In this document: positions 11,800 through 43,400 of the stretch, in pieces | Layout of the letters: every line of letters begins with the position of its first letter | Numbering within the stretch: position 1 is the stretch's first letter | Source: Macrostomum lignano | Lineage: Eukaryota | Assembly (NCBI GenBank): GCA_002269645.1 | Contig: NIVC01000017.1 | Span: 62,001 to 126,000 of the forward strand | Length of the DNA: 64,000 bases | Direction: 5' to 3' | Notes under the pieces: generated by a model | The model's database searches: none | Told to the model about the DNA's origin: nothing | The model's input: only the letters and a program-made list of their open reading frames with translations | Program-made: the position numbers and the translations under genes

Positions 11800-13380
11800 A
11801 TTTTGCATCTTGTAAGGGTTGAAGTCTACCGATCACAATGCTGCTATAGCCTCTTTTCATCATCTGAAGCTCTGCAGTCTTCTGTCAAAGATGACACTAA
11901 TAGCCAGAAAACTTCATTCCATCCAGAAGACTCCTGCTTGCTAGGTTGCTGCCTTGTTGAAGAGAGTTCGAGAGTACTTGCCAACCGAAACAGACGTTGT
12001 CTTGCGTCTGCTCCGGCTCCGGATTGTTTCTACCGCCGCTTTGTTTGCGTTCACTGCCATTTTTGGTCGGGTTGTCCACGAAAAAACAATGTGCGGCTAG
12101 AGACAGTACCTGTTGTACCTTGCGTGTTGCACCCTTGTCTATTTATAATGTACATCAAACTAATGTACATCCACAATAATTAGGTGCACGTTGCTCTCTG
12201 AGCAAACCCTTAGATCTCAAATTTATAAATCGCATTCAATGCCCAAATATGGGCTAACTTTTTATTTAGCAAATTTTACTGGCCTCGCGTCGGCCAATAT
12301 TGGGCAAACCTTTTGTGGAAGACTTGCTTTGCAGAAGGCGATGTGAGTTCACTCTTCTGTATGAAGAACAGGCTTCCAGAGCAGGCCCATCTTGCCAGAT
12401 CTCATCAAAGGTTCAATAGAATTCTATCGATGCTTATTGAGGGCAACTTCCAATGACAGCACTGAAGTCGACTGTGAAGAGTAGAACCTAACTGACAAGC
12501 TATCAATTTTCATCATTTAAATGAAACCGTAAAAAATAGCAATATATTTTTACACAGCTCTCTTTCTTCATTTATACCAAGTCTCTGCAACTAAGTGTGG
12601 TGTCTACACTTTTTATTACGATGTGGGCATGGATTTACCAAGTGATCTGTGGCAGAGCAACGGTAGAACTTGCGAGTAGATGTAGGCTTTTCCTTCCCTG
12701 AATTGGTGGGTCTCAGTATTGGTGGGTCGCTTCGAGCTTCCACTCTGTTCACTGCTGAAGCCGATCCTTGGATGCTGCGAGCGTTGTTGTACGCATTTTC
12801 AATGACCCGGGCCTCAACTGCGACTTTGAATGTCGATTCGTCTTTTAGAGTTAGAGAGTCAATAGCTTGTTCAACATATGCTCGTATCTGAGATCGAAGC
12901 CAGAAGCATCGCAAAGAGCTTGATCGAGGAATGTGGCACTGAGACTTCGAAGACTTACCAAAAAGTCCGCTATTGTCTCACCATCCTGCTTCCGTTGGGC
13001 GAATGGAAATCGTTGAGCAATAGAGCTCAGTTCCAGGGTAAACTGGTGCCGGAGTGCAGTCAGTAGCTCCTTGTATGACTTCTGGTGCAATTGCGTTCCT
13101 CAGAATTGAGTAAGCCTCTTCTCCGATCCAGGTCAGCAGGTTGGCCTTTTTCTCAGCTTCAGTGACTTTCTTGGCCAGAAGAAAATACTACATACGCTAC
13201 TCGTACTCCTAGTTACAAGGGTTGCTGTAGATTACCTGCAGATAACCGGCCTTGTCGCCATTTTTTTGTTCGTGTCGTATTTTGTGTCAGAGCACGTTTA
13301 CTAAAAAGCAAACACAGGCTCGAAGCCTAATTAGAACAAGTTTTAAAATGAATCTTCAGCAGTCCGCTACTTTGCGGATA
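11800..13380 (-). mobile_element. Degenerate Ty3/Gypsy LTR-retrotransposon remnant (gag recognisable, pol largely lost)
   Basis: The minus strand reads N*EYE*RM*YFLLAKKVTEAEKKANLLTWIGEEAYSILRNAIAP, then KSYKELLTALRHQF..SIAQRFPFAQRKQDGETIADFLVSLRSLS and a degenerate knuckle FYRCSATDHLVNPCPH. It carries stops and frameshifts, and a PBS-like TGGCGAC lies at ~13255-13261. The left boundary is uncertain. Confidence 0.7.
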
Positions 13381-20020: not shown

Positions 20021-23000
20021 ATGTCCGAACCAACAGACGAAAGCATGACTGGCGCAGAAGCCGCCAGCACCAAGCCGGACGAGACGACATCGGCCACTGC
20101 CGCGGCCGCCACTGCCACCGCCGGCCAGAAGCGCAAGGCCGACTTAAACAAAGACTCCGATGGGGAAACCAAGACTCAGGCTAGTCAAAACGGAGACAGC
20201 GCGACGCCGGCTAAACGCATGAAACTGTTGTTGACATCCTCGTCGCCCAGGCCGCCAACTGACCGGGCCTTCTTGGAGCTCCTTGAACCGTCGGACGCCG
20301 ACTCTGAGCAGCTGGCCGGCCTGAAGGCCCGCCTGTCCGATTTCAGCGCCGACGCTGTCCGACTCATCGCCCGACCGGACGCTTTTGTCCGATTCTTGGC
20401 AGCCGGATCCGACCGTTTGGAATGCTGCCTGGCCGACTGTCTGGCCGAAGAGAGCGACGCTGCATCCGCAGTCGCCGAAGCCGCCGTCGACCTGCTGTCC
20501 GCCTGCTTCAGCCGCCTGCTCCGCCTTTACGTGCGCCACCTGCCGGTGCAGCGGCTCGACGCTGCCAATCCGCGCATGCCGTCGCTTCGTCAGGTTGGCG
20601 ACGCCCTCGCCGAAGTTAACCGGCTGGCCAGCGGCTTCGGCTTCCAGCTGGCCGAGTCCGCCGCCCAGCTGGCCGGCAACCTGGCCAGCCTGGCGGAGCA
20701 GCTGCCCCCTCAGCAGCTGTTCTCAAGCATCTGCCAGACCGCCGATTGGTCCAGCGAAGCCGGCCTGTCCCAGCCGATGCTGTCTCAGCTAGTCCGACTA
20801 ACCGAGCAGAAGCTCGAACTTCCGACTGTACAACTGCCGTTCAACGTTGTAGCCGTCGTTCGCGACGCTATCGCTGCTTGTCTGCTCACCGATTTGGACA
20901 CCGACGCTGGCAAAGCCGACGCCGAGGGCAAAGACGATGTCGGCGACAATAACGAATCGGTATGGCGCCTCGATCAAGCTATCGATCGGATCCGATCGGC
21001 TCTGGATAATTTGCCTCGGGAGCTGGCCAAACAGAGGGCGGCAGCCGTGGCTGCTGCGGCCGCTGCCGCTCCAGCCGAGACTGAGAAATCGTCAATGGCG
21101 GAGGGCGAGGCCGAGGCTGACAATTCGGCTGCCGACAATGCCGAGACGGAAGCGGTCAAGCCCGACCCGGAAGCGGAAGCCTCTGCCAAGGCGGCCGCCG
21201 AAGCGGAGGCCGCCGCCAAAGCCGCCGCCATCGCCTACGCGCGGCCCGCCCTGGCCGCCGCCCTTATCGAATGCCTCGTCATCCTGCACCTGACCCCGCA
21301 TCCGCGTCGCCAGATCGCCTCGGCCGCTAGTATTCGTCGACGTCTAGACGACGCCCGAGCCTTGGCCGAGGCCTTCAACTCGGCAGAGCAGCTTCGCCCG
21401 GCTCTGGACGCCATCGCCGAGTGCCTGCTTGAGCCGCTGACTCCTCAGCCAAAGCCCGATCCTCTGGCCCGTTGGCTGCTAAACGACCCGGACGACAGTC
21501 TGCCGCTGCCGCCAGACGACCAGCTGCCTAAAGTTGATAGCGAGGAGCTGCTGAAGTATCGCGGCCAGCCGCCCGTGGCCTGGGCTCGCCACGGCCGCGC
21601 CGCTATCAGCCGGCTTGTCGCTGAACTAGTTTCGTCGTCAGCTAACGCTGATGCCGCCAGTGCGTCGAAACTTCGACGTCAAATCGACGACATGCTAGCT
21701 CGATGCCGCGGCACCGTCGAATGGCCGCTCGGCGTTGCCTGCGTCAATTCTGCCGTCGAGCTCGGCGTTCTCGGTGGCGCCGGCTGCAGCGGCGGCAACG
21801 TGTCGCCAACAAAGACTCGAAGACGAGGCGCCGCTGCCAAGAGCGCCGCTGCCGCTGCAGGCGCCAGCAGCTGGCCATCGGAATCGGCACTCCGACAGCA
21901 GCTGCTGACTGCCGGCAGTGGCTCGTCCGGCCTCCTTGACGAAGCCAATCTGCGCCGTGTCTGCCTGGCCGCAGTGTCCGGGCAAAAGCCAAGCCCGCCA
22001 GCCTACACTGTCCGACTGGATGCCGAGATCGTCGCCGACGCCACTCCGCCGGAAGCTTCGTTGACGTCGGCCGCTTTTGCCGACCGTCGAATTGACTGGC
22101 GCCTTGGCCAGCGCTACAGCCTGCTGGAGTTCAGCGTCCACCGGCCGCCGCCGCCGCCTCCGCCGCCGCCAACTTTGCCAATTTCGTCAACAAAAAGTTC
22201 GACGGCGGAGGACCTGCCGAAGTCGAAACCGGCGGCCGGAGACGGCAACAACGGCAAAGCTCGTCGCAATGCGGATTCGCTAAACCCGGACGAGGCCTCG
22301 CTGATCGGCGCCCTGGACATGTGGGCCAGCCGCTTTGCATTTAACGGCTGGAACGCCTTCTCCGCCAACCTGCTGTCCCAAGCCGTTGTTGAATTCCTTA
22401 CAGACAGTCGGGACAGCGCCAATAATAGCGCCGACGAGTCCGGCAGCGTGACGGTGCTGAGGACCGGCTTGAACCAGTTCTGGTCAGGCGTCATTGAGCG
22501 CATTGTCAGCGATAGACGGTCTAAGCTGAGCGTGCCGTATCTGCGCTCTGTGTTCACCGCGCTGGAGCAGCTGCGCACCGTGGCCTCGGAGATCGCGCTG
22601 GAGCCCAGCCTGGAGACCAGCCTGAAGAACATCGCCCTGGTGACGAGCTGGACCGAAGCCAGCTTCGATAAGCACTGCCGTCGTGTTGGAATCTTCCGCG
22701 ATTTTAAGCGCGATTATTTGACCGCTCTGCTGCGCTGCCACAGGGAGCCGCTGGAGCTGCGGCCGAGTCACGTGGCCGCGGTGAGAACTTTGAGATGACG
22801 CAATCGATGTAGGACTGGAGGAGCAGCGGCGGTTAATAGGATTAGCACTAAAACCCGTCGATATACAACGGTGAAAGTTAAAGATTAGAACTTAACTGAT
22901 AGCATTTCAATATTAACAGTAGGAATACCAAGCCATTTTTCCGCCCGTCGAACTACAAAGGGGATGAGAATGCTTAAAAGACTACGAGTTGAGGATGTCC

Positions 23001-23682
23001 AGCAGTTGAGATTTGCCCACTGTGGAGGCTTGATTAGCGGAACTAGACTAATTCGCAGCAAGGTGGCTGGTGCCACCTGTTGAAGGTCCAGAAGCTCCGT
23101 CTGGGTGACATTTTGTCGTTTTAGAATCGTCTGGAGTCACTTCTTTTCTGTTTTACCTGTGTTACCTGTAACGACTGTGAAACGATTCTGGGGCGATGCA
23201 AGCAAGCTTCTGGGGTGCCGTTTTTGTCGGGTCTACTCAGTAGTAGGTGATCTCTTCTTATTCACTGGAATGCATTTTCAAGCCAGCATCTCCCCAACCC
23301 TCGCTGCCTCCAGATCACGGAGAAACACGTGGCCGCCTATCACAGCATCCGTCGCCTGCTAGACGCTCTGTTCCACTGCCGCGATTGGTTCGCCTTCGTG
23401 TCCAGCGGCGGCGGCGGCTACGAAGCCCTGGTCAGGCGGGCACCGCGCGATGCCCTGAGCTGTCAGCTGGTGTGCACGGCCCTAATGGAGGCGCTGTTCT
23501 GGTACCGGCTCCGCCTGCACCTTGGCCAGCCGGGCGAGCTGTACAGATTTAGCCAGGCCGAGGCCGGGCTCAGGGCTGACGGACTGCGCAGGTTTGCTAA
23601 GGCTATCGGTTGTAAAGTTCTGATGCGCGGCGACTGGCTGGAGCCGGTCATTGTGGAACTGCTTACCGACTGTTCGGAGTGA
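20021..23682 (+). CDS. ~1042-aa uncharacterised Ala-rich helical protein with an N-terminal NLS-like KRK..PAKRMK. Exons 20021-22780 and 23314-23682.
   Basis: The 925-codon ORF has a strong donor GCG|GTGAGA at 22781. Acceptor CTCCAG ends at 23313 and the phase-0 join reads SHVAA|ITEKHVAAYHSIRRLL, ending ELLTDCSE*. No family recognised. Confidence 0.7.
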
Positions 23683-24990: not shown

Positions 24991-27900
24991 ATGTTTGCCA
25001 GCAGCAGCAGCAGCAGCAGTAGGGCATCCAGCGGTCCCATCGACCTGCTGTCTATGATGCAGAAGCATCCTTCGAAACGCGGAGCAGAGGAGGTGCCGTT
25101 TGAGGCTGCCGAGAAGATTGTCGACTTCTCTGTGCTGAAGGCGCTACGCGTTCCCAAGCGGATGCAAAATCCGGCAGGTGAGCGGGATGGGGAGCTTGGA
25201 GTGTGTGCTAAGTTTCTTTAAATCTCAAATTAATGAACTTCAATCAATAGTTTGAATTTGATCTTCATTTCGAAATGAGAAAGATAAACAGTCGTGAGAG
25301 AAAAGGGCTACCGCGACCCTCCCATATCCTCAGTTGCTGGGCCAGCCTCCCAGATCCTCAGTTGCTCAGCCAGCCTCCCAGATCCTCAGTTGCTGTGCCA
25401 GCCTCTCAGATCCTCAGTTGCTGGGCCAGCCTCCCAGATCCTCAGTTGCTGGGCCAGCCTCCCAGATCCTCAGTTGCTGTACCAGCCTCCCAGATCCCCG
25501 GTTGCTAGGCCAGCCTCCCAGAGTGTCAGTTGCTGGGCCAGCCTCACAGAGTGTTAGTTGCTGTGCCAGCCTCCCAGTGTGTCAGCTGCTCGGCCACCTT
25601 CCCAGATCCCCAGTTGCTCGGTCACCGCTACCCTTGTAGATTTATAGCTCGTATTTTCCGGGCCTCAACCGCTTCAAACCTTCAGTTCCACTGCTCATCA
25701 ACACACCGCCAAAATACCCTTCCCCCATAGAGATTCTCCGCCGCGTCAGCCCCGACTCCAAGGAGTTCAAGACCGAGATCGAGCGCCAGCTGCGCGCCAG
25801 CTTCCTCAGCCGGGAGCAGGAGCGGCAGTTTCGCGTGCAGGAGGCCTTCATGATTGAAAACTACGCGCTCAATGAAGAAGTTAGTCAAATCCTTTCAGCA
25901 ATGATGACTTCATTTTGGGAACATTATATGCACTGGGCTTGGCGCTTTATATTTCCCATCTGTTTTAATGCAGTCTCCTCTGCAATCCCACAACTTCAAA
26001 ATCCCCTATGGTTAGGCGGCTTAGGGAATATGAAGGTTGGGGAATGTGAAGGTTGGGAAATGTAAAGGGTGGAGAATGTGAAGGGTGAGAAATGAGAGAA
26101 AGTTAGAGAATGTGTAGGTTAGAGAACGAAGGTTGGGGAATGTGAAGGTTGGGAAATGTAAAGGGTGGAGAATGTGAAGGGTGAGAAATGAGAGAAAGTT
26201 AGAGAATGTGTAGGTTAGAGAACGAAGGTTGGGGAATGTGAAGGTTGGGAAATGTGAAGATTGGGGAATTTAAAGGTTGGAGAATGTGAATGTTGGGGAA
26301 TGTGAACGTTGGGAAATGTGAACGTTGGGAAATGTGAACGTTGGAAATGTGAAGATTGGGGAATGTGAAGGTTGGGGAATGTGAAGATTGGGGAATGTGA
26401 ATGTTAAAGGCATGTAAGTTAAAGAACATTCAGACTTGTTTACTTAATTCGATGCCAAATTGAGAGTCGATCATATCCGCCGCTCTCCGCAGTACCGAGC
26501 CAAACGAGCAGAAATGCGCGAAGCTGCCGCAGCCGCCGAAGCGGAAGCCGCCGTGTTTTCCGGCGCCGGCGGCCCCGTTACCATGGAAACGGCCAACGAC
26601 GATTCGGCAGGGACCGGCGCTGCGGCTGCTTCGACTTCTGGTCCAACGGAGCAGCTCGCCTATCTGGCCGTGGCGACCGAAGCCGAGGCTCGGGCTATAG
26701 CCGAACGCGGCGTTGCTAAGGGCAACTTGCCGGATAGTCGCCTAGCAACGGGTGAATCCGGCGTCAGCCTGTGTCAATACGTCGATCGCACCTGCCCGAA
26801 ACGCGGCCTGCAACCGGCCGGCTGGCTGCTGGTGCTGCGCTACCTTCGCTGCCGAGTCTGCCGCTGGGCCGAAGGGGACAGCGTGGCCGAGCCGCAGCCC
26901 CAGTTCGACTGTCACGTTAGTCGGCGAGGCCGGGCCGACGGTCTGGAGCAGTTGCCGCTGCCTGATGCCTTTCATTCGAGCCAGGTCGGGTTTTTACTTG
27001 GCTAGTGGGTCATTGTGTTGTCAAGCTAGTGGGTCATTGGGTGGACAAGCTAGTGGGTCATTGGGTGGACAAGCTAGTGGGTCATTGGGTGGACAAGCTA
27101 GTGGGTCATTGGGTGGACAAGCTAGTGGGTGATTGGGTGGGAAAGCTACTGGGTCATTGGGTGGATAAGCTACTGGGTCATTGGGTGGGCAAGCTAGTGG
27201 GTCATTGTGTGGACAAGCTACTGGGTCATTGGGTGGGCAAGCTACTGGGTCATTGGGTGGACAAGCTAGTGGGTCATTGGGTGGACAATCTAGTGGGTCA
27301 TTGGGTGGACAAGCTAGTGGGTCATTGGATGGACAAGCTACTGGGTCATTGGGTGGACAAGCTAGTAGTCATTAAAGCAGACCAGTGGGACACTAGTTTG
27401 TCCACCCAATCAGTCCTGCGGCAGCGGTTAAAAGGCATGCTCGCCTACACATTTACTTGCACCCGAACCTTTGCGCAGGTATTCCTATTCGAATACTCTG
27501 AGGATTTCGATTTGCTCGACCGGCCTCGCCAGGCCGTGCCGGTAGCCGCTGTGCGCTACGAATTCTCCGGCCGGATTGTCGCCTCCCAGCAGCAGCAGCA
27601 GCAACAGGCGCAGCAATCAAAGCCGGACTCTATGCAGCAGCAGCAGCAGAAGCATTCAGCTTCATCAGCCAACAATCCAAATAAAGTTGACCGATCGAAA
27701 TCCGGCATGCTTCATCAGCCCAGCCGGTCATCCGGTCCCGGTCGTTTGCCGTTCGTCGCCAGCCGGCAAGGCGGCGGCACCCTGGTTGGCCAGCTCAGCC
27801 TGGGCCTCGAGCTGCCCGGCTTGGCCAGCCTCTACCTGGATTTGGTGTCGCTGGAAGCTGTTCCGTTTGTGTTCCCCTGTCTGCAGCAGGATGGTGGCAA

Positions 27901-30787
27901 TTTGCAGGTGTGTGTGTGTGTGTGGCAACTCGCACCGCTCGAGGTCGCATGTCCCCCTGAGAGACCATGGGAAGGTCTTTCTTTATAATAAAAACTACAT
28001 GACCCCCCTAAAGGACCATAAGAGGTCATAGGACTCAAGAGGTCGCATGTCCCCCATAGGACTCAAGAGGTCGAATCCCCTCTCATAGGGAGGACTGGAG
28101 AGGTCGCATGACCCCTCATAGAGATTGGAGAGGTCGCATGCCCCCTCATAGGGATTGGAGAGGTCGCATGCCCCCTCATAGGGATTGGAGAGGTCGCATG
28201 ACCCCTCATAGAGATTGGAGAGGTCGCATGCCCCCTCATAGAACTGGAGAGGTCGCATGCCCCCTCATAGAAATTGGAGAGGTCGCATGCCCCCTCATAG
28301 GGATTGGAGAGGTCGCATGCCCCCTCATAGAACTGGAGAGGTCGCATGCCCCCTCATAGAACTGGAGAGGTCGCATGCCCCCTCATAGAACTGGAGAGGT
28401 CGCATGCCCCTTAACGGTAAGATCTCCAGCCCCCTTCATCCCCACTAATGGAATCGTTACTACGGCTCGCCATGTCCCCCCCCCAGGTCCGCTTCATCGA
28501 ATTCGACGATCTGCTGTCCAGCCTGTCCGGTTTCAAAATTCGTGGATCTCGAGAAGTCACCGCGGCGGCCGGCCCCATCGACTCCGAATCCTCAGCAGCA
28601 GCAGCAGCCGGTCACGTGAGCTACCTGGTCGGTCTGGCCACTCCCGACAGCACGCATCCGCTGGCTCGACTGTGCAATCAGTTAGTGCTGAGCCGCCGGG
28701 CCCTTCTCTGCTCGCTAACTTCGGCCAGCAGCGGACGGGACGGCCGCCTGCCCCTGTGCTACCTAGTGCCCTCGGACAGCCGGCCAGCCGAGCGGCTTAA
28801 CCTCGACCGGCTGGCCAGGAAACTGTCTGACCCGGGCAGGCATCAGCTGCACGTCATTGTGTGGCTGCCGCTGCCCAGATCCGACTGCTTCTTCGACTAC
28901 AGCCGTCTGGACCAGTGGCACCGGCTGCCGCAGCCGCACGGCGGCGTCGGCGCCTACTGGGCTGCAGAGTGCCGCTCGGATCGGCGCGGTTGCTATGCAA
29001 CCTATTCGACAGCGGCCGATCGGATCGGCCACCTGGCCAGGCAGGCCGCCGGACAGCGTCGCGATCTGCAAGCCCGGGTCGGCATGCCCGGCCTGGTCTA
29101 TCTGCCGCTGAAGGAGCTGCTGCCGAAACCGTCGACATCGAATCTGAAGCCAACCGACGACAACTCAGTCGATGAGCAGCGGCGGCGATCGCCGATAGAA
29201 GCTATCCACAGCCCGACGCCTCCTCCGGCGAATGTTAATGATGACGATGATCTGTCTCTTCCGCCGCCCGACAAGCTGGTGTTCGACGAGCCGCCCGACT
29301 CGCCAGATGACGATGTTGACGCCTATAGCGGCGAGGAGAGCAAAGATAATAATGTCGATAATGCCTGCCAATCGCCGATCTCTTATCACGACAATCTGCT
29401 GTTGGATCTGCCTGTTCTGCCGGATCAAAAACCTGCTGCCCCTGCTACTGCTGCTGCTGCTTCTGCTAGCGCTGGCACCGGCAATACGTCTACCTCTTCA
29501 ATAAAACGTCGCTTTACCTCTGATGCTGCCGACATTGACGACCGGAAACGGCCCCGACCTCTTCCTTCGCAGCCTCCGCCGCCTCCACTGCAACAGCAGA
29601 AACAGCAGACTCAACAGTTTATCAGCAAGTTAAAGCAACAGATTAGCAATCTAAGGGATAATGTCGAACGGCAGAGACTGCTCAAGCTGAACGATTTAAC
29701 GTCGCCGGCTTCTCCTCAGACGACATCGTCGCCGCCGCCGCCGCCGCCGCCGCCGCAGCCGCCTCAATCGGCGACAGTGCCGCAAAAGGTCGCTTCGATT
29801 CTGCCGCCTCCCGAGTCGCTGATAGCGGCAGCTGCGACAGCCAGAGACCCGACGCAACCCTCGCCAATGTCTCCGTCGCCTCCTTCGACGCCGCCTCCGC
29901 TGCGCCTGCTGGAAGCGCCGGCTTCGCCATCTCCGCCGCAGGCTGCATCGCCTCCTTGTTCTGCTGTTGCTGAAACCGACATCGATGAGCGACGATCTGC
30001 TTTACCATTTCAGCGGAATGCTGAGTCCGTGCCGTTCGATCAGCTGGTTGAGCAGCCAGCCAAGCGACCGATTAAACGGGCTTCGATAGATCTTGAAGAC
30101 GATTCGATTAATCCTGAGGAGTCATTGTGGCGGAGGCCGCGGCACTGCCACGATGGCTCTCTCGGCGACGTTGACGAACGCTGGCATCAGCCTCTTTTGC
30201 TGTCGTCGGCGTCAGCAGCTTCTTCCAATCAGGATGTCGACATGCGCCGGATGGCGCCGCCCTCTTCTACGAACATCAATTCCGCTAGTCGCCGAGTCAA
30301 CCCTCTGCCGCACCCCAGCAGCCTGCCGCCGCCGCCCAAGAAGCTTTCGGCGTCCCCGCCGTCGCTGTCACCGCCGCCGCCGCCGCCACCTCCGCCGCAG
30401 CGACCTCCGGCGACGTTGCTTAATAATAGATCGGCGCTATTTGCCAGGCAGCATCCGCACCCGGCTTCATCAAATCGTAGCATTGCTAATCTTAGTAATA
30501 ATAATAGTAGCAGAAACGGGCCGCCGCCGCCGCCGCTGCCATATTCGAATCGCCTGCCATCGAACCGGCCGCCGCCAAGGCCGTTTCAACAGCAGCGGCC
30601 GGCGTCCACTTCAACAACAGCTTCGAGAATGAATGGAAACGTCGGCGCGGCGAGATTTCGGTCGCCGCCTTCCCCGACGCAGCGGGGAGGCGGCGTCAGC
30701 GGTAGCCGCGGCGGTCGGGACGGCAGCGGCGCATACGGCGGCTTCGGCGGCATCCAATCGCGTCAGTTTTACGATCGTCGGTTTTGA
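24991..30787 (+). CDS. TASOR: TASOR/FAM208/TEX15-type protein (~1185 aa): N-terminal pseudo-PARP (DUF3715) domain, SPOC-like domain and long Pro-rich tail. Exons 24991-25177, 25731-25879, 26493-26984, 27479-27907, 28487-30787.
   Basis: All four introns are GT-AG with compatible phases (1,0,0,0). The spliced product has the ordered family motifs LRVPKR, VSPDSKEFKTEIERQLRASFL, AFMIENYALNEE|YRAKRAEM, EQLAYL, IAERGVAKG, GVSLCQYVD, EPQPQFDCHVS and SQ|VFLFEY..RPRQAVPVAAVRY. It then has VGQLSLG..VPFVFP..|VRFIEFDDL and LCYLVP..LHVIVW (SPOC-like). Orthology to TASOR versus TEX15 is not resolved. Confidence 0.82.
25320..25625. repeat. 28-bp minisatellite CCCAGATCCTCAGTTGCTGGGCCAGCCT in TASOR-like intron 1
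   Basis: Period 28 (25341, 25369). The same family occurs at 42250-42608. Confidence 0.93.
26020..26410. repeat. ~16-bp G-rich minisatellite (GGGGAATGTGAAGGTT) with a ~96-bp internal duplication, in intron 2
   Basis: Repeated GGGAATGTGAA. The block at 26061 recurs at 26157. Confidence 0.88.
27000..27365. repeat. 24-bp minisatellite GCTAGTGGGTCATTGGGTGGACAA in intron 3
   Basis: Period 24. It produces the spurious KLVGHWVD ORF. Confidence 0.95.
27935..28405. repeat. 29-bp minisatellite GGAGAGGTCGCATGCCCCCTCATAGAACT in intron 4
   Basis: Period 29 (28321, 28350). Confidence 0.93.
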
Positions 30788-31015: not shown

Positions 31016-31770
31016 AAGTCCCATCTGAGTAGCCTCAGTCCCATCTGAGTAGCCCCAGTCCCATCTGAGTAGCCCCAGTCCCATCTGAGTAGCATCAGTC
31101 CCATCTGAGTTGCCCCAGTCCCATCTGAGTAGCCCCAGTCCCATCTGAGTAGCCCCAGTCCCATCTGAGTTGCCCCAGTCCCATCTGAGTAGCCCCAGTC
31201 CCATCTGAGTAGCCCCAGTCCCATCTGAGTAGCCCCAGTCCCATCTGAGTAGCCCCAGTCCCATCTGAGTAGCCCCAGTCTCATATGAGTAGCCCCAGTC
31301 CCATCTGAGTTGCCTCAGTCCCATCTGAGTAGCCCTAGTCTCATCTGAGTAGCCCCAGTCCCATCTGAGTTGCCTCAGTCCCATCTGAGTAGCCCCAGTC
31401 CCATCTGAGTAGCCCCAGTCTCATATGAGTAGCCCCAGTCCCATCTGAGTTGCCTCAGTCCCATCTGAGTAGCCTCAGTCCCATCTGAGTTGCCCCAGTC
31501 CCATCTGAGTAGCCCCAGTCCCATCTGAGTAGCCCCAGTCTCATATGAGTAGCCCCAGTCCCATCTGAGTTGCCTCAGTCCCATTTGAGTAGCCTCAGTC
31601 CCATCTGAGTAGCCCCAGTCCCATCTGAGTTGCCCCAGTCCCATCTGAGTAGCCCCAGTCCCATTTGAATTGCCTCAGTCCCATCTGAGTAGCCCCAGTC
31701 CCATCTGAGTAGTCTCAGTCCCATCTGAGTAGCCCCAGTCTCATATGAGTAGCCCCAGTCCCATCTGAAC
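31016..31770. repeat. 20-bp minisatellite GTCCCATCTGAGTAGCCCCA
   Basis: Period 20. An inverted copy of the same family lies at 43037-43238. Confidence 0.96.
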
Positions 31771-32492: not shown

Positions 32493-34313
32493 ATGGAAAT
32501 TGAGAAAACTTTTGCCTGCGACTCAGCTTCCGCTGATATTGAAGCGGAACTGAACCCGGATGCAAACCCGGATGTAAATTCGGATATGAACCCGGATGTA
32601 AACCCGGATATGGACCCGGATTTTAACCCGGATTTAAACCCGGATGTAAACACGGATATGGACCCGGATTTGAACCCGGATTTAAACCCGGGTGTAAACA
32701 CGGATGTAAACCCGGATTTAAACCCGGATTTGAACCCGGATATGAACCCGGATGTAAACCCGGATGCAGAAGTGGAATGGCGGCGCCGCTGCCGCTCCAG
32801 CCGGCCTACAGACCGTACGCAGCGCCTGCGCAATCGGCGATTCCAAGCGATGCAGCGCCTAGCAACGGAGGGCGAGTATTTCTCGGACGAGAGCATGCGC
32901 AACCGAGAGCCCTACCTGTATCACAAGTACATCGGCCGGTACTTGACCCGCGAGGACGTCCATCGGCAGAGTTCAGCGGCCGCCGCCGCCGCCGCTGCTG
33001 CTGCCGGAGGCGACGGAGAGAGCGTGATGTCGCATTTCCTTACTCAGCACTGCGTCCGGCTGGAGGAGAATTCCAGGTTCGGGTTGCTGAGTTCTCATAA
33101 TTTAGGGTTGATTACTGCTGTTAGAGTTTGAGATACCTTAACCTGATGCCAGTGTCAACCTTTTCAAAAGCATAAAAATAGAGGATAGAAATCCCCATTC
33201 TGAATGAATAGAAATCCCCATTCTGACTGAATAGAAATCCCCATTCTGACTGAATAGACATCCCCATTCTGAATGAATAGAAATCCCCATTCTGAATGAA
33301 TAGACATCCCCATTATGAATGAATAGAAATCCCCATTCTGAATGAATAGACATCCCCATTCTGAATTAATAGAAATCCCCATTCTGACTGAATAGACATC
33401 CCCATTCTGAATGAATCGACATCCCCATTCTAACTGAATAGAAATCCCCATTCTGAATGAATAGACATCCCCATTCTGAATGAATAGAAATCCCCATTCT
33501 GACTGAAAAGAAATCCCCATTCTGAATGAATAGAAATCCCCATTCTGAATGAATAGAAATCCCCATTCTGAATGAATAGACATCCCCATTCTGAATGAAT
33601 AGAAATCCCCATTCTGAATGAATAGAAATCCCCATTCTGAATGAATAGACATCCCCATTCTGAATGAATAGAAATCCCCATTCGGAATGAATAGAAATCC
33701 CCATTCTGACTGAATAGAAATCCCCATTCTGAATGAATAGACATCCCCATTCGGAATGAATAGAAATCCCCATTCTGAATGAATCGACATCCCCATTCTG
33801 AATGAATAGAAATCCCCATTCCGAATGAATAGAAATCCCTATTCTGAATGAATCGACATCCCCATTCTGAATGAATAGAAATCCCCATTCCGAATGAATA
33901 GAAATCCCCATTCTGAATGAATAGAAATCCCCATTCTGAATGAATAGAAATCCCCATTCTGAATGAATAGAAATCCCCATTCTGAATGAATAGAAATCCC
34001 CATTCTAATTACCTACCGCAGATACGAAGCCGCGGCCGCCGCGGATTCTGACAACTCATCAAACAACGAGGAGGAGGATGATGATGATGGTGATGATGAG
34101 GCCGGCGGCATCGGCAGCAGATTCCTTCCGGATCGCAAGCGTCAGCTGCTTCGTTCGGAGTTCTTGGCGTTGATGCAGCGTCGCTTCTTGGCTGGAAAGG
34201 ACGTTGAGTACTTTGACTACGGCCAGGTCGACCGGGACGACGACTTGGATTTGTCCGGCGAGTTTGAGCGGGACGAGGAGGATCGCTACTTCGATTCCGA
34301 GGAGCCCAGCTAG
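32493..34313 (+). CDS. CCDC97: Coiled-coil domain-containing protein 97 (DUF2052), ~291 aa. Exons 32493-33076 and 34022-34313.
   Basis: LRNRRFQAMQRLATEGEYFSDESMRNREPYLYHKYIGRYLT in exon 1. A phase-2 splice (AG|GTTCGG; CCGCAG|A) leads to RSEFLALMQRRFLAGKDVEYFDYGQVD..ERDEEDRYFDSEEPS*. The true N-terminus is uncertain. Confidence 0.9.
33180..34007. repeat. 23-bp minisatellite AATCCCCATTCTGAATGAATAGA filling the CCDC97 intron
   Basis: Tandem period 23. Confidence 0.96.
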
Positions 34314-35360: not shown

Positions 35361-36956
35361 GCAGGGGTCGGCAAACTTTTTACCTCAAGGGCCAGATAGG
35401 GTCTTTAGATCATTAACTGCGGGCCAGATAGAGTCTTTAGATCATTAACTGCGGGCCAGATAGAGTCTTTAGATCATTAACTGCGGGCCAGATAGAGTCT
35501 TTAGATCATTAACTGCGGGCCAGATAGGGTCTTTAGATCATTAACTGCGGGCCAGATAGGGTCTTTAGATCATTAACTGCGGGCCAGATAGGGTCTTTAG
35601 ATCATTAACTGCGGGCCAGATAGGGTCTTTAGATCATTAACTGCGGGCCAGATAGAGTCTTTAGATCATTAACTGCGGGCCAGATAGGGTCTTTAGATCA
35701 TTAACTGCGGGCCAGATAGAGTCTTTAGATCATTAACTGCGGGCCAGATAGGGTCTTTAGATCATTAACTGCGGGCCAGATAGGGTCTTTAGATCATTAA
35801 CTGCGGGCCAGATAGGGTCTTTAGATCATTAACTGCGGGCCAGATAGAGTCTTTAGATCATTAACTGCGGGCCAGATAGAGTCTTTAGATCATTAACTGC
35901 GGGCCAGATAGGGTCTTTAGATCATTAACTGCGGGCCAGATAGGGTCTTTAGATCATTAACTGCGGGCCAGATAGGGTCTTTAGATCATTAACTGCGGGC
36001 CAGATAGAGTCTTTAGATCATTAACTGCGGGCCAGATAGAGTCTTTAGATCATTAACTGCGGGCCAGATAGGGTCTTTAGATCATTAACTGCGGGCCAGA
36101 TAGGGTCTTTAGATCATTAACTGCGGGCCAGATAGAGTCTTTAGATCATTAACTGCGGGCCAGATAGGGTCTTTAGATCATTAACTGCGGGCCAGATAGA
36201 GTCTTTAGATCATTAACTGCGAGCCAGATAGGGTCTTTAGATCATTAACTGCGGGCCAGATAGGGTCTTTAGATCATTAACTGCGGGCCAGATAGAGTCT
36301 TTAGATCATTAACTGCGGGCCAGATAGAGTCTTTAGATCATTAACTGCGGGCCAGATAGGGTCTAGATCATTAACTGCGGGCCAGATAGGGTCTTTAGAT
36401 CATTAACTGCGGGCCAGATAGGGTCTTTAGATCATTAACTGCGGGCCAGATAGGGTCTTTAGATCATTAACTGCGGGCCAGATAGGGTCTTTAGATCATT
36501 AACTGCGGGCCAGATAGGGTCTTTAGATCATTAACTGCGGGCCAGATAGGGTCTTTAGATCATTAACTGCGGGCCAGATAGGGTCTTTAGATCATTAACT
36601 GCGGGCCAGATAGGGTCTTTAGATCATTAACTGCGGACCAGATAGGGTCTTTAGATCATTAACTGCGGGCCAGATAGGGTCTTTAGATCATTAACTGCGG
36701 GCCAGATGAGAGAGGAAAAGGTAATAGAGATGAGAGAAGAGATAAAGGTGAGAAGCGAGATCAGAGCCATGGTGAGAGAAGAGGAGAGAAGATAAGAGGA
36801 GAGGAGAGATGGGAAAAGAAAAGAAAAGGAACTCAGAAGAGGCAAACCTTGAGCGGGCCGGATTGCTATTATATAAAGTTTCAAAGGACCCGAGGGCGGA
36901 AAGAAAGGCTTTGCTGGCCGCATGTGGCCCGCGTTCCGGAGTTTGCTGACCCCCTG
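35361..36956 (+). mobile_element. hAT-type non-autonomous element carrying an internal 32-bp tandem array
   Basis: Left TIR CAGGGGTCGGCAAACT at 35361 and right TIR AGTTTGCTGACCCCCTG ending 36956. Perfect 8-bp TSD ATTTAGAG at 35353-35360 and 36957-36964. Confidence 0.92.
35390..36706. repeat. 32-bp homogeneous array GTCTTTAGATCATTAACTGCGGGCCAGATAG(G/A), about 40 copies, inside the hAT element
   Basis: Period 32 (35401, 35433). It varies almost only at one G/A position. Confidence 0.97.
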
Positions 36957-40401: not shown

Positions 40402-43400
40402 ATGTCTGATCCCGTCGTAAATTTGAAACGAACCGCCTCGGTTCACTCGATGCCAAGCGGAAACGCCACCGCCGCCGCCACTCCCGACTCTCCGTCTCGA
40501 ACGCCACCTTTAATCGATGGTGCTCAGCAGCCGAGGCCGAAGACAGGCCGACAGCATTCAACAGCCGACAGTCACTGCGATCCAGCGGCCGCCGCGGCCC
40601 GTCGTCTATCTTATCCGGCGCAATCTTTCGACGATGTCGCCGCCGCTAGCGGAGGCGCCGATCGAAGCGCCTCTGATGACGCAATCGATCGTTTGTTTAC
40701 GTCGAATTCTTTCGATGAATTGGTTAATTCCTTGCACGGATTGCTGGCCGCGCATCCCACGGAACAGGTGGGCGTGGGGTGCTCATTTTTGTGCGCTTGC
40801 TCAAGATTGTTGGCCCTTATTGAATGGTTAGATCCAGAGGGAATCCCATCCTGGTTAGAGGAAATATCATCCTTCAGAGGGGACAGGGAATCCCAACTCT
40901 CATCGCAATCTCACCCCTGTCGAAGAAAATCCCATCTTGCTCAGAGGGAATCTGGACTTGCTTAGAGGGAATCCGGACTTGCTTAGAGGAAATCCCAACT
41001 TGCTCAGAGGAAACCCGACTTGCTTAAAGGGAATCCCGGCTTGCTTAGAGGGAATCCCGACTTGCTTAGAGGGAATCCCGGCTTGCTTAAAGGGAATCCC
41101 AACTTGCTCAGAGGAAATCCCAACTTGCTCAGAGGAAACCCGACTTGCTTAAAGGGAATCCCGGCTTGCTTAGAGGGAATCCCGACTTGCTTAGAGGGAA
41201 TCCCGGCTTGCTTAAAGGGAATCTCAACTTGCTCAGAGGAAATCCCAACTTGCTCAGAGGAAATCCGACTTGCTTAAAGGGAATCCCGGCTTGCTTAGAG
41301 GGAATCCCGACTTGCTTAGAGGGAATCCCGGCTTGCTTAAAGGGAATCCCAACTTGCTCAGAAGGAATCCCAACTTGCTCAGAAGGAATCCCGGCTTGCT
41401 TAGAGGGAATCCCAACTTGCTCAGAAGGAATCCCAACTTGCTCAGAGGGAATCCCAACTTGCTCAAAGGGAATCCCATCATGTTGACTCCTACAGAAGTC
41501 GAATGAATCGAACCCACACCTAAATTTCCAAATCCCCAAGGAGATCAGCCGGGAACGGGTTATCGAATCTCTGCGCGAGGCCTCCAGCTACACCAGCAGC
41601 GAGTTCCTGCTTGCCGACACTGCCGGCCTTCGTCAACCGGCGGCTGCGGCGGCGGCCCAGTCTGGCAGCGTGCTGCGCAAGCTGATCGACTTTCCCAGCA
41701 CCTTCATCGACCAGGCGCTGGAGGTGGCCGCCAGGCAAGGCGGCTACTGGATCATGAGCCTGCTGCCGATTCACGAGGTCGTCACTCTGATGCTGCTGCT
41801 CATATTCCGCTGGTTAAATGTCGAATTCCTTCAGCAGCTGGGCTGGCTGGTCCTGTTCTACTGCGGCCTGGCCTGCATGCTCACCTGCAGCTTCCGGGTG
41901 CTGCACGCGCTCGTCACCGACAGACGGCGGGGCAAGCCGCTACGGCGGGCCGTCAAGCGGCTACTGAAGGACGCCAGCGCCGAGGAGAGGTCGACAGCCG
42001 TTCGCCGACTCGGCCGGCGTCGGCATCAGGCGGCCCTGTCGGGTAACAGCGTCGGCTGCCTTGTTGCCTGCCTGTGCGCCGCTGCCGGATACGGCCTCTG
42101 CAGCCACGTGCTGGTGCCCGCCTCCGAGATGCTCATGCTGAGCTGCCTGATGGCACTGCTGCTGCTTGTCTACGGAGGCGGGGGCAATCGATTCAGGTTT
42201 GCGTGGGATATGGAAGCCAAATGGTTCACGACTGCTGGGTATCCGGTTCTAGATCCTCAGTTGCTGGGCCAGCCTCCCAGATCCTCAGTTGCTGGGCCAG
42301 CCTCCCAGATCCTCAGTTGCTGTGCCAGCCTCCCAGATCCTCAGTTGCTGGGCCAGCCTCTCAGATCCTCAGTTGCTGGGCCAGCCTTCCCAGATCCCCA
42401 GTTGCTGGGCCAGCCTTCCCAGATCCCCAGTTGCTGGGCCAGCCTTCCCGGATCCCCAGTTGCTGGGCCAGCCTTCCCAGATCCCCAGTTGCTGGGCCAG
42501 CCTTCCCAGATCCCCAGTTGCTGGGCCAGCCTTCCCGGATCCCCAGTTGCTGGGCCAGCCTTCCCAGATCCCCAGTTGCTGGGCCAGCCTCCCAGACCCT
42601 CAGTTGATAGCTAGGCCTATCACTTAGTTTGTCTTGCCTTTTTCTGAGCTACTCGTACTTGCTTTTGCCCACTTGGATGCCTATAAAGCAACTGCTCCAA
42701 CGGCAAAGTCTTACAGTCCTAATCAATTGGCTACTCAGTGACCTTCTCATGTCTATTTCCGAATCCCGCTAATAATCTTCATGCTTTTCGTGATAGTTAC
42801 TTTGCATTGGCTATCCTGGTTCAACTATGCGTTTTAAATTTCAGAGTGAATTTCATAAACTAGTGCCCAGTGGTAGTTAAATAGTTAATTTAAATACTGG
42901 CTGCCGTGGCTCCTAATTTTTGCTGCTTAGGTATCACCATAAAATTTTTGCAGCGAATTAATAATTCAATTCTGTTCATAGTCCACTGGATTGCTCTCTG
43001 GATCTTTCCTATCTTTCCTATGCATGGTTTTGTATAGATGGACTGGGGCTACTCAGATGGGACTGGGGCTACTCAGATGGGACTGGGGCTACTCAGATGG
43101 GACTGGGGCTACTCAGATGGGACTGGGGCTACTCAGATGGGACTGGGGCTACTCAGATTGGACTGAGGCTACTCAGATGGGACTGGGGCTACTCAGATGG
43201 GACTGGGGCTACTCAGATGGGACTGGGGCTACTCAGCTAGAACTTGGCTTTCTCAAATAGATCTGAGGCTGCTTAAAGTGGACCAGAAATCGTAGTCTGG
43301 TGCTTTCCCGACGTCAATCAACCACAGCTCTATATTTGCCTCTCCCCCAGGTGGATAAAGCTTTGCTTTCTACTAACCAGCTTGTACTCCGGTTTGCCAG

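What the first reader, a model, noticed from the sequence alone, without database searches (positions are those of the whole stretch)
24991..30787. TASOR/TEX15-type pseudo-PARP + SPOC silencing protein in an invertebrate, hidden across five exons
Seen: no single ORF reveals it, but five phase-compatible exons give a 1185-aa protein carrying the TASOR N-terminal motif series and a following SPOC-like block. Where canonical PARPs have the catalytic HG motif it reads EQLAYL. A ~40-aa Ala/Gly insert interrupts the PARP-like fold, and the tail is Pro-rich with a terminal RGG-like stretch. Known: TASOR scaffolds the HUSH retroelement-silencing complex and TEX15 acts in piRNA-directed silencing, both studied mainly in vertebrates. 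Inference: this repeat-laden genome may run an ancestral HUSH-like or piRNA-linked silencing system.
Basis: partly seen in the sequence, partly recalled or inferred. Interest (0 to 1): 0.8.

Follow-up and report, generated by a model that had tools for sequence, protein, structure and literature searches.

The report
Flatworm TASOR-like pseudo-PARP/SPOC gene
The region holds a real five-exon gene of the flatworm Macrostomum lignano for a TASOR-like protein (dead PARP domain plus a probable SPOC domain and a long disordered tail); this protein family is already known across invertebrates, so the main gain is a corrected gene model, not a new system.

Summary
Five GT-AG exons (24991-25177, 25731-25879, 26493-26984, 27479-27907, 28487-30787, + strand) splice into an open 1185-aa protein. 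It passes Pfam's DUF3715 cut-off (33.1 bits against 28.5) and matches the solved TASOR pseudo-PARP 6TL1 (E 2e-8). The catalytic His position is Leu. TASOR's long beta8-beta9 loop and its essential Tyr are kept. The ~43-aa Ala/Gly insert, the Pro-rich tail and the terminal RGG stretch are all present.

The block after the pseudo-PARP is probably a SPOC domain. Sequence evidence is weak (hhalign P 6e-4 to 6e-3). An AlphaFold model (pLDDT 75) matches the SHARP, RBM15 and SPOCD1 SPOC structures (TM about 0.6), but its alignment was mostly TASOR-like proteins.

The organism is Macrostomum lignano. TASOR-like DUF3715-SPOC proteins across invertebrates were published in 2023. UniProt already names flatworm "TASOR pseudo-PARP" proteins, including a 38%-identical M. 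lignano paralog.

New here: a full-length model where public models are fragments or fused to the upstream gene, and a short architecture with no DomII/PIN, an unclear DomI and an RGG tail. The silencing role and any HUSH-like complex remain untested inference. Interest is modest.

The parts
24991..25177 (+). Exon 1 (aa 1-62, phase-1 end): start ATG, poly-Ser, start of the N-terminal region conserved with the M. lignano paralog
   Evidence: GT donor at 25178; stop 11 codons upstream of the ATG; 100% identical to the UniProt M. lignano model P0001
25731..25879 (+). Exon 2 (aa 63-112): first helices of the pseudo-PARP; contains Leu83, aligned with TASOR Leu130 (site of the mouse lethal L130P mutation)
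26493..26984 (+). Exon 3 (aa 113-276): Ala/Gly insert plus the core of the DUF3715 pseudo-PARP
   Evidence: alone it scores 20.7 bits, below the gathering score
26520..26648 (+). Ala/Gly-rich 43-aa insert (aa 122-164) between the two TASOR-matching stretches
26649..26672 (+). EQLAYLAV strand (aa 165-172); Leu170 sits at the position of the PARP catalytic His (TASOR Leu184)
   Evidence: alignment; L184H statement; numbering inferred
27479..27907 (+). Exon 4 (aa 277-419): end of the pseudo-PARP, poly-Q linker, first strands of the SPOC-like domain
27488..27532 (+). Extended beta8-beta9 loop FEYSEDFDLLDRPRQ (aa 280-294), with Tyr282 aligned to the functionally essential TASOR Tyr305
27587..27649 (+). 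Poly-Q linker (aa 313-333)
27779..28870 (+). SPOC-like beta-barrel domain (aa 377-547), interrupted by intron 4
   Evidence: AF2 pLDDT 75, pTM 0.70; Foldseek hits to SHARP, RBM15 and SPOCD1 SPOC structures, TMt 0.55-0.63; hhalign P 6e-4 to 6e-3
28487..30787 (+). Exon 5 (aa 420-1185 plus the TGA stop): rest of the SPOC-like domain and the 536-aa low-complexity tail
29612..29698 (+). Short helix/coiled-coil-like island QQFISKLKQQISNLRDNVERQRLLKLNDL (aa 795-823) inside the disordered tail; role unknown
   Evidence: read from the sequence; no homology found
30683..30751 (+). C-terminal RGG/Gly-rich stretch (aa 1152-1174)
25318..25618 (.). Intron 1 minisatellite, 28-bp unit x 10.8
26024..26405 (.). 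Intron 2 minisatellite, 16/96-bp unit
27001..27373 (.). Intron 3 minisatellite, 24-bp unit x 15.6
28026..28410 (.). Intron 4 minisatellite, 30/89-bp unit

Best explanation
This is a protein-coding gene of the flatworm Macrostomum lignano for a TASOR-like nuclear scaffold protein.

Shown:
- An N-terminal DUF3715 ('RDTS') pseudo-PARP domain that has lost the NAD+-binding residues. It keeps TASOR's extended beta8-beta9 loop and its essential Tyr.
- A poly-Q linker.
- A domain that most likely has the SPOC beta-barrel fold.
- A 536-aa Pro/Ser-rich disordered tail ending in an RGG stretch.

Inferred by analogy with vertebrate TASOR: the protein does not ADP-ribosylate anything. It acts co-transcriptionally as an adaptor in RNA-directed repression of transposons and other intronless or repetitive transcription units. 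In this reading the pseudo-PARP is the effector module needed for H3K9me3 deposition, the SPOC-like domain is a protein-protein docking module, and the RGG/low-complexity tail supplies RNA binding or multivalency.

It belongs to a platyhelminth branch of the metazoan TASOR-like family. It is one of at least two divergent paralog lineages in M. lignano.
For: - Gene model.
- DUF3715 above Pfam's gathering score and a match to the TASOR structure 6TL1 at 2e-8.
- 92 relatives at E<=1e-3 among 1.84 billion representatives. The best are invertebrate TASOR-like proteins (Capitella, Owenia, Lingula, Tubulanus, Branchiostoma, Saccoglossus), trematode 'TASOR pseudo-PARP domain-containing' proteins, and vertebrate TASOR, TASOR2 and TEX15.
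- His to Leu at the TASOR L184 position, Ser at the Y217 position, and a conserved Tyr305 equivalent with the long loop.
- No canonical PARP hit in Pfam.
- SPOC: the post-DUF3715 block of 49 family members forms one profile. With the flatworm rows included, that profile hits the FPA SPOC structure at 2.7e-7 and RBM15 SPOC at 0.0076.
- The flatworm block aligns in register with the family profile.
- The AF2 model has pLDDT 75, and its only compact structural matches are SPOC domains (TMt 0.55-0.63, prob 1.00). Ku beta-barrels, the known SPOC relative, also appear.
- Both domain blocks are conserved between the two 38%-identical M. lignano paralogs while the linkers are not. This argues for long-term constraint.
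- The functional roles of these domains in TASOR come from Douse et al. 2020 and Schopp et al. 2023.
Against: - No transcript evidence for the junctions or for expression.
- Sequence-level support for SPOC is weak. hhalign gives Prob 6-28% and P 6e-4 to 6e-3, against 0.21 for the reversed control. The flatworm-only profile finds no PDB entry. Pfam SPOC does not hit.
- The confident AF2 model was obtained only with an alignment dominated by TASOR-like sequences. The flatworm-only run failed with pLDDT 31, although it showed the same order of strands and helices.
- DomI, which binds MPP8 in TASOR, is not demonstrable: pLDDT is 35-67 after the barrel.
- The C-terminal half matches no family member, so the Periphilin-binding segment and DomII/PIN of TASOR are absent or unrecognisable.
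- Nothing here shows silencing activity or the presence of partner proteins.
Confidence: 0.72

Rival explanations
1. The gene is not separate. It is the 3' part of a larger transcript that starts in the upstream neighbour (20021-22798 plus about 23316-23646). That would give a fusion protein in which an unrelated N-terminal region (named 'CULLIN_2 domain-containing' in UniProt) precedes the pseudo-PARP.
For: Two public M. lignano protein models, P0001 (A0A1I8GLY0) and P0004, join the upstream gene's last exon to exons 1-2 of this gene. A GT at 23647 and the AG at 24989-90, directly before the ATG, allow an in-frame splice.
Against: - The upstream gene has its own stop 11 codons after that donor, at 23680-82.
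- Both fused models stop at the end of exon 2 and look like gene-prediction artefacts. P0004 needs frame-shifted readings.
- The 1.3-kb spacer is AT-rich and holds a minisatellite.
- The paralog locus L001 has no homolog of the upstream gene next to it.
- Other family members have no such N-terminal extension.
- An AG directly before the ATG would also fit spliced-leader trans-splicing, which I recall is reported for this species (my own knowledge, not checked here).
Confidence: 0.12
2. The protein has a DUF3715 pseudo-PARP, but the following block is a lineage-specific domain unrelated to SPOC. In that case it is a DUF3715-only protein, like the mollusc and TEX15-side members, rather than TASOR-like.
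For: Pfam SPOC gives no hit. The flatworm-only profile finds nothing in the PDB. The family HMM scores the flatworm block only marginally. hhalign probability is 6-28%. The AF2 result may be imposed by the alignment.
Against: - The alignment is in register over about 110 columns, with the family's conserved positions shared.
- The reversed-profile control is about 35-fold worse.
- Trematode flatworm members join the SPOC family profile at E<1e-3.
- The order of secondary-structure elements is the same in the independent flatworm-only AF2 run.
- The block sits exactly where SPOC sits in TASOR-like proteins.
- pLDDT is 90 or more for 102 residues of a query only about 15% identical to the alignment rows.
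Confidence: 0.15
3. The locus is a decaying duplicate (pseudogene) in a recently duplicated genome. The intact reading frame is a remnant without function.
For: M. lignano is a hidden polyploid (PMC5704211 abstract). A 95%-identical copy exists whose public model shows frame-shift-like differences (P0002). P0043 looks like a frame-shifted fragment.
Against: There are 3555 nt of uninterrupted coding sequence across five exons with canonical splice sites. All functionally flagged TASOR residues tested are retained: the L130, L184 and Y305 equivalents. The 2.3-kb exon 5 stays open.
Confidence: 0.06
4. It is a catalytically active ADP-ribosyltransferase of an unusual type, not a pseudo-enzyme.
For: The fold belongs to the PARP/ART superfamily. 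Active-site migration is known in some 'pseudoenzymes' (general point in PMC10211241, seen only as an abstract).
Against: The His position is Leu and the Tyr217 position is Ser. There is no hit to the canonical PARP family. Human TASOR, with a less degenerate site, binds no NAD+ mimic and shows no activity.
Confidence: 0.03

Closest known systems
Invertebrate 'TASOR-like' proteins (DUF3715-SPOC-DomI architecture; Schopp et al. 2023, RNA 29:1471, PMC10578480), including UniProt 'TASOR pseudo-PARP domain-containing protein' entries of the trematodes Fasciola hepatica and Calicophoron daubneyi
   Same: The DUF3715 pseudo-PARP is followed, after a linker, by a SPOC-type block. The flatworm sequences group together in a rough NJ tree of the domain. 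Best database relatives are lophotrochozoan and deuterostome invertebrate members.
   Different: Much shorter than most members (1185 aa against 1400-3800). The SPOC block is highly divergent, about 15% identity. DomI is not recognisable. There is a 43-aa Ala/Gly insert in the pseudo-PARP. The C-terminal half is pure low complexity with an RGG end.
Macrostomum lignano paralog A0A1I8H023 / PAA47320.1 (P0003/P0005; locus NIVC01004496.1)
   Same: Same species and same two conserved blocks: 51% identity in the pseudo-PARP core and 35% in the SPOC-like block. It shares the HSSQVFLFEY strand and the long-loop motif.
   Different: Only 38% identical overall. It has fewer introns (continuous coding where the window gene has introns 3 and 4). 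Its insert is shorter, its tail is different, and it has a different genomic neighbourhood. It is already annotated as DUF3715-containing, whereas the window gene's pseudo-PARP core is in no public protein model found.
Vertebrate TASOR (HUSH scaffold; structure 6TL1; Douse et al. 2020)
   Same: Pseudo-PARP with Leu at the catalytic His position. Extended beta8-beta9 loop with the essential Tyr (Y305 equivalent) and RPR motif. L130 equivalent present. SPOC-type domain next.
   Different: No detectable DomII/PIN or Periphilin-binding segment, and DomI is uncertain. Even the last conserved NAD+-site residue (Y217) is Ser. It has an RGG tail, which TASOR lacks. Partners MPP8 and Periphilin are not shown to exist in this genome.
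TEX15 (piRNA-directed silencing factor)
   Same: Shares the DUF3715 domain. TEX15 representatives appear among weak hits at E 1e-6 to 1e-4.
   Different: No TEX15 domain. TEX15 lacks SPOC and is reported as vertebrate-specific. TEX15 sequences fall in a different part of the domain tree, with SPOC-less mollusc proteins.
S. pombe Chp1 (RITS complex)
   Same: A SPOC-containing scaffold in RNA-directed heterochromatin formation. Douse et al. proposed it as the analogue of TASOR.
   Different: Chp1 has a chromodomain and DomII/PIN and no pseudo-PARP. No sequence relation was tested here.

Membership tests
DUF3715 / TASOR pseudo-PARP (RDTS) domain, Pfam PF12509 | Match to the family HMM above the curated gathering score | tested here: met
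   33.1 bits against a cut-off of 28.5, E 6.7e-8, aa 169-297, profile positions 18-150 of 150. This needs the spliced exons 3+4, since exon 3 alone gives 20.7 bits.
DUF3715 / TASOR pseudo-PARP (RDTS) domain, Pfam PF12509 | Sequence homology to the solved TASOR pseudo-PARP structure over the whole domain | tested here: met
   6TL1 chain A, E 2e-8. Stretches aa 66-121 to chain 5-59 and aa 165-306 to chain 70-210 of 214.
DUF3715 / TASOR pseudo-PARP (RDTS) domain, Pfam PF12509 | Degenerate NAD+ site: the catalytic His is replaced by a hydrophobic residue | tested here: met
   Leu170 aligns with TASOR Leu184. Ser at the TASOR Tyr217 position. No canonical PARP Pfam hit at E<=10. The residue numbering is inferred from the chain numbering.
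DUF3715 / TASOR pseudo-PARP (RDTS) domain, Pfam PF12509 | Extended beta8-beta9 loop with the essential Tyr (TASOR Y305) | tested here: met
   FEYSEDFDLLDRPRQ against TASOR YEYGFD-ELRRRPRH. Tyr282 aligns with Y305, and the loop is one residue longer.
DUF3715 / TASOR pseudo-PARP (RDTS) domain, Pfam PF12509 | No ADP-ribosyl transferase activity; required for H3K9me3 deposition | not testable with these tools
   Needs biochemistry and genetics.
TASOR-like architecture (DUF3715-SPOC-DomI; Schopp et al. 2023) | SPOC domain directly downstream of DUF3715: sequence-level homology | tested here: inconclusive
   No Pfam SPOC hit. hhalign of the flatworm profile against the family profile gives P 6e-4 (Prob 28%) and 5.8e-3, with the reversed control at 0.21. 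The flatworm-only profile has no PDB hit. The family profile including the flatworm rows hits FPA SPOC at 2.7e-7.
TASOR-like architecture (DUF3715-SPOC-DomI; Schopp et al. 2023) | SPOC domain: fold | tested here: met
   AF2 model of aa 372-625: pLDDT 75, pTM 0.70, residues 1-180 mostly above 75. Foldseek gives SHARP SPOC 1OW1/7Z1K at TMt 0.61-0.63, RBM15 7Z27 at 0.55-0.58, SPOCD1 8OU1 at 0.60, and Ku barrels. Caveat: the alignment was dominated by TASOR-like sequences, and the flatworm-only run failed with pLDDT 31.
TASOR-like architecture (DUF3715-SPOC-DomI; Schopp et al. 2023) | DomI after SPOC (the MPP8-binding region in TASOR) | tested here: inconclusive
   About 70 residues after the barrel are conserved with the paralog. 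They are predicted as helices at pLDDT 35-67. hhalign does not extend into them.
Vertebrate TASOR orthologue / HUSH scaffold | C-terminal DomII/PIN domains and the Periphilin-binding segment (TASOR 1014-1095) | tested here: not met
   aa 620-1185 gives no phmmer hit at E<=10 against 93 family proteins, including full-length TASOR, TASOR2 and invertebrate TASOR-like proteins. No Pfam domain. The region is 18.8% Pro and low complexity. Only sequence-level sensitivity was applied.
Vertebrate TASOR orthologue / HUSH scaffold | Partner genes MPP8 and Periphilin (plus SETDB1 and MORC2 effectors) present in the same genome and bound by the protein | not testable with these tools
   No eukaryotic genome collection and no reference sequences were at hand. 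None of these genes lies in the 64-kb window.
TEX15 | TEX15 domain(s) C-terminal to DUF3715; no SPOC | tested here: not met
   No TEX15-family Pfam hit at E<=10. A SPOC-like domain is present. The literature places TEX15 in vertebrates only.
Canonical PARP catalytic domain (PF00644) | H-Y-E (or H-Y-x) NAD+-binding triad and a match to the PARP HMM | tested here: not met
   No PARP hit at E<=10. The His and Tyr positions are Leu and Ser.

The most novel reading that the evidence does not exclude
The flatworm protein may be a compact, 'single-chain' version of a HUSH-type silencer. It would combine a TASOR-like pseudo-PARP+SPOC head with its own Periphilin-like low-complexity, RGG-ended RNA-binding tail. 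Without DomII/PIN, and perhaps without an MPP8-docking DomI, nascent-RNA recognition and effector recruitment would sit in one polypeptide. It would act in neoblasts or the germline of an animal whose genome is crowded with repeats. If so, M. lignano, which is transgenic- and RNAi-tractable, would be a model for the ancestral, pre-vertebrate mode of RNA-directed transposon silencing by DUF3715 proteins.
Probability: 0.1. Interest if true: 0.6.

Novelty: new member of a known kind. Interest (0 to 1): 0.3.

Why it matters
TASOR and TEX15 are central to RNA-directed transposon silencing in vertebrates. What their invertebrate relatives do is untested. This locus gives a complete, checkable gene model for a TASOR-like protein in Macrostomum lignano, a flatworm in which RNAi and transgenesis work. 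It shows that the public models of the locus are broken: they are fused to the neighbouring gene, or they lack the pseudo-PARP core altogether. It also shows that the species carries at least two divergent paralog lineages. That makes a functional test of the DUF3715 'RDTS' domain outside vertebrates practical. It does not reveal a new kind of system, because the family's presence across Metazoa is already published.

Tried and rejected
1. First word-indexed protein search with aa 1-646. It returned only the fused model P0001.
2. Word-indexed search with the pseudo-PARP core, Ala runs removed. There were no hits. I take this as absence of this core from the public 90%-cluster models, not as absence of homologs, since the exhaustive search found 92.
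3. AF2 on a three-sequence flatworm-only alignment gave pLDDT 31, which is unusable.
4. HMM of 49 post-DUF3715 segments against the flatworm proteins gave only a marginal local match. One script call was lost.
5. Flatworm-only profile against the PDB found nothing.
I therefore could not ask whether the same model exists in NCBI's annotation.
7. Synteny test between the window and the paralog locus found no shared neighbour. DNA similarity is limited to 160 bp of the pseudo-PARP core.
8. Literature search for HUSH, MPP8 or Periphilin in flatworms, or for the evolutionary origin of HUSH, found nothing beyond Schopp et al. 2023. That paper's supplementary tables are not held, so I could not check whether M. 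lignano was in their set.
9. TEX15-type reading: rejected (no TEX15 domain; SPOC-like domain present).
10. Active PARP reading: rejected (His and Tyr lost).
11. The NJ tree of the domain has no bootstrap values and long branches. I use it only to say that the flatworm sequences group together and sit inside neither the vertebrate TASOR/TASOR2 clade nor the TEX15 clade.
Full report
**1. What is in the sequence**

The region 24991-30787 holds no single long ORF except the last one, 28448-30787 at 779 aa. Reading the DNA and splicing five segments gives 3558 nt in frame and a 1185-aa protein that ends at the TGA at 30785-30787.
- The segments are 24991-25177, 25731-25879, 26493-26984, 27479-27907 and 28487-30787.
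- Every internal border is AG|exon|GT.
- The ATG at 24991 is the first start after an in-frame TAA 11 codons upstream.

**2. Is it a real gene and are the junctions right?**

No transcript data were available, so I used homology across the junctions.
- The TASOR crystal-structure sequence aligns without a gap through the exon 2/3 junction, 'ENYALNEE|YRAKRAEMR' against 'VHNELLEKEFTEKRRELK'.
- A divergent M. lignano paralog (P0003/P0005) has fewer introns. Its locus L001 encodes 'GFHSSQVFLFEYGPD' and the stretch around the exon 4/5 junction as continuous DNA. These match the window's 'AFHSSQ|VFLFEYSED' and '...NLQ|VRFIEFDDL'.
- The exon 1/2 junction also aligns ungapped with the paralog.

The Pfam score shows the effect of splicing. 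Exon 3's ORF alone gives DUF3715 20.7 bits, below the gathering score of 28.5. The spliced protein gives 33.1 bits.

**3. Organism**

Exons 1-2 are 100% identical to a UniProt protein of Macrostomum lignano (P0001, A0A1I8GLY0). A 95%-identical fragment, P0002 (A0A1I8I998), covers aa 353-608.

**4. The pseudo-PARP**

Database evidence:
- Pfam DUF3715 at E 6.7e-8.
- TASOR structure 6TL1 at E 2e-8 over two stretches that together span the whole solved domain.
- An exhaustive HMMER search of 1.84 billion representatives found 92 relatives at E<=1e-3, 22 of them at <=1e-10.
- The named relatives are TASOR-like proteins of annelids, a nemertean, a brachiopod, molluscs, a hemichordate, an echinoderm, amphioxus and trematodes. 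Vertebrate TASOR, TASOR2 and TEX15 are also among them.

Residue-level comparison with the published TASOR work:
- Leu170 in 'EQLAYL' aligns with TASOR Leu184, the position of the PARP catalytic His. [quoted passage not shown]
- TASOR's only surviving NAD+-site residue, Tyr217, is Ser here.
- Leu83 aligns with Leu130, the site of the mouse lethal L130P mutation.
- The unusually long beta8-beta9 loop is kept. 'FEYSEDFDLLDRPRQ' aligns with 'YEYGFD-ELRRRPRH', and Tyr282 aligns with the essential Tyr305.
- The residue numbers in TASOR are my inference from the chain numbering of 6TL1.

No canonical PARP family scores at all. The 43-residue insert at aa 122-164, with 15 Ala and 6 Gly, sits where TASOR has about ten residues. 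The paralog has a shorter insert at the same place.

**5. The SPOC-like block**

This is the least secure part of the finding.

Weak or negative sequence evidence:
- Pfam SPOC does not hit the protein. Better-behaved family members (Saccoglossus P0014 and P0015) reach only sub-threshold SPOC scores.
- I took the 360 residues after DUF3715 from all hits and iterated a profile from P0014. Forty-nine proteins joined, including the trematodes.
- That profile scores the M. lignano proteins only marginally.
- Profile-profile comparison gives an in-register alignment of 106-113 columns, with P 6e-4 (Prob 28%) or 5.8e-3 on the trimmed set. The reversed control gives 0.21.
- The flatworm-only profile finds nothing in the PDB.

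Supporting evidence:
- A 38-sequence MAFFT alignment places the flatworm block consistently with the family's conserved positions. These include the nearly invariant Glu, the G-x-Y strand, the 'L..L..L....A' helix, the 'L.L.PS' strand and the 'LH..F..P' strand.
- The profile of that alignment hits the solved SPOC domain of FPA (5KXF, 2.7e-7) and of RBM15 (7Z27, 0.0076), and weakly SHARP.

Structure prediction:
- With only three flatworm rows the AF2 run failed (pLDDT 31).
- With the 38-row alignment it gave pLDDT 75 and pTM 0.70, with 102 residues at 90 or above.
- Foldseek against the PDB returned the SPOC domains of SHARP (TMt 0.61-0.63), RBM15 (0.55-0.58) and SPOCD1 (0.60) as the only compact matches. 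The rest were Ku beta-barrels, the known structural relative of SPOC.
- The good model leans on family sequences whose homology is the point at issue.
- Against pure circularity, the failed flatworm-only run shows the same order of strands and helices, and the block lies exactly where TASOR-like proteins have SPOC.

I rate SPOC as likely, at about 0.8.

The roughly 70 residues after the barrel are conserved with the paralog but are predicted only as low-confidence helices. TASOR's DomI cannot be affirmed.

**6. The rest of the protein**
- Residues 313-333 are a poly-Q linker.
- The 536 residues from aa 650 to the end are 18.8% Pro and 13.2% Ser, with two poly-Pro runs.
- One helix-like island lies at aa 795-823.
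- The tail ends in RGGGVSGSRGGRDGSGAYGGFGG.
- This half has no Pfam domain. It has no phmmer match at E<=10 to any of the 93 family proteins, including full-length TASOR.
- TASOR's Periphilin-binding segment and DomII/PIN are therefore absent or unrecognisable.

**7. State of public annotation**

Public models of this gene and its near-identical copies found here are fragments.
- P0001 and P0004 join the upstream neighbour's last exon to exons 1-2 and stop there.
- P0002 and P0043 cover parts of exons 4-5, partly frame-shifted.
- No protein over 50% identical covers the pseudo-PARP core in the exhaustive search. A word search with that core finds nothing.

The fusion with the upstream gene is probably an artefact.
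- The upstream gene has its own stop at 23680-82, 11 codons after the donor used.
- The spacer is 1.3 kb.
- The paralog locus has no such neighbour.

By contrast, the 38%-identical paralog is already labelled 'DUF3715 domain-containing protein' (A0A1I8H023). Trematode relatives are labelled 'TASOR pseudo-PARP domain-containing protein'.

**8. How it most likely works**

Shown: a catalytically degenerate PARP fold of the TASOR type, a probable SPOC barrel, and a disordered RGG-ended tail.

Inferred from TASOR biology (Douse et al. 2020; Schopp et al. 2023):
- It is a nuclear adaptor that acts on nascent transcripts of transposons.
- The pseudo-PARP is needed for the repressive output (H3K9me3 in vertebrates) rather than for complex assembly.
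- The SPOC-like domain docks partners.
- The RGG/low-complexity tail may supply RNA binding or multivalency, which Periphilin provides in HUSH.

Whether MPP8 or Periphilin equivalents exist in this genome could not be tested. The lack of a recognisable DomI and Periphilin-binding segment lowers the specific claim 'HUSH-like complex' more than the general claim 'RNA-directed silencing adaptor'.

**9. Comparison with what is known, and novelty**

Schopp et al. 2023 report four things:
- DUF3715 arose early.
- TASOR-like proteins (DUF3715-SPOC-DomI) occur throughout Metazoa, invertebrates included.
- TEX15 is vertebrate-specific.
- Distant DUF3715 domains can replace TASOR's.

The present gene is thus a new, previously mis-modelled member of a known family. 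It has a reduced architecture and a divergent SPOC. A rough NJ tree puts it with its paralog, near a few unnamed sequences and the trematode proteins, and outside the vertebrate TASOR/TASOR2 and TEX15 clades (no support values).

**10. Verdict**
- Novelty: new member of a known kind.
- Interest is about 0.3. The value lies in a correct gene model in an experimentally tractable flatworm.

Noticed in passing
window 1-64000 (e.g. 3425-5123, 31017-31768, 33185-34006, 35389-36707, 47092-48077): The window holds about 35 separate minisatellite arrays (units mostly 16-38 bp, arrays 200-1700 bp) plus long (CTGT)n, (AGAC)n and (ACAG)n tracts. All four introns of the TASOR-like gene and both of its flanks carry a different array. 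This is a genome-wide habit, not a feature of this gene.
   Followed up: partly
window 25318-25618 and 42251-42606; 31017-31768 and 43036-43236: The same minisatellite families recur at distant places. The 28/29-bp unit of intron 1 reappears 17 kb downstream inside or next to another gene's ORF (41670-42614). The 20-bp unit downstream of the gene reappears inverted at 43036-43236. This suggests that the arrays are mobile or spread by some copying process.
   Followed up: partly
window 54154-58984, minus strand: A Ty3/gypsy-type retroelement. Its 942-aa pol ORF (54987-57815) has RVT_1, RNase H, integrase zinc-binding and rve domains. A gag-like ORF lies at 57861-58505. The element is bracketed on both sides by arrays of the same 22-bp unit (54154-54526 and 58655-58984). 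Either the LTRs contain the array or the element inserted into one. It is a potential target of the kind of silencing discussed here.
   Followed up: partly
window 20021-23682, + strand: The upstream neighbour gene has a 925-aa first ORF plus a last exon of about 23316-23682, with its stop at 23680-82. It has no Pfam domain, although UniProt calls the fused model 'CULLIN_2 domain-containing'. Public models P0001 and P0004 splice it onto exons 1-2 of the TASOR-like gene.
   Followed up: partly
L001 (NIVC01004496.1 30109-44137), about 8949-13015: The divergent paralog of the gene has a different intron pattern: it is continuous where the window gene has introns 3 and 4. Its NCBI model (PAA47320.1) starts inside the pseudo-PARP, so it is N-terminally truncated relative to the UniProt model A0A1I8H023.
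   Followed up: partly
window 60042-60542, minus strand: A single-ORF TNF-family domain protein (Pfam TNF 24.0 bits against a cut-off of 23).
   Followed up: no
window 2781-3200 and 5235-5867, + strand: An RRM-domain exon (Pfam RRM_1, 56 bits) and a Pro/Tyr/Gln-rich ORF, apparently exons of one RNA-binding protein gene. They are separated by a 1.7-kb array of a 26-bp repeat at 3425-5123.
   Followed up: no
tree; proteins P0063, P0083, P0042, P0040: Several mollusc DUF3715 proteins (Mytilus, Solemya, Sinanodonta, Batillaria) did not join the SPOC profile. In the rough NJ tree they group on the TEX15 side. This fits the published idea of an ancient split between the TEX15-type and TASOR-type domains, but the tree has no support values.
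   Followed up: no
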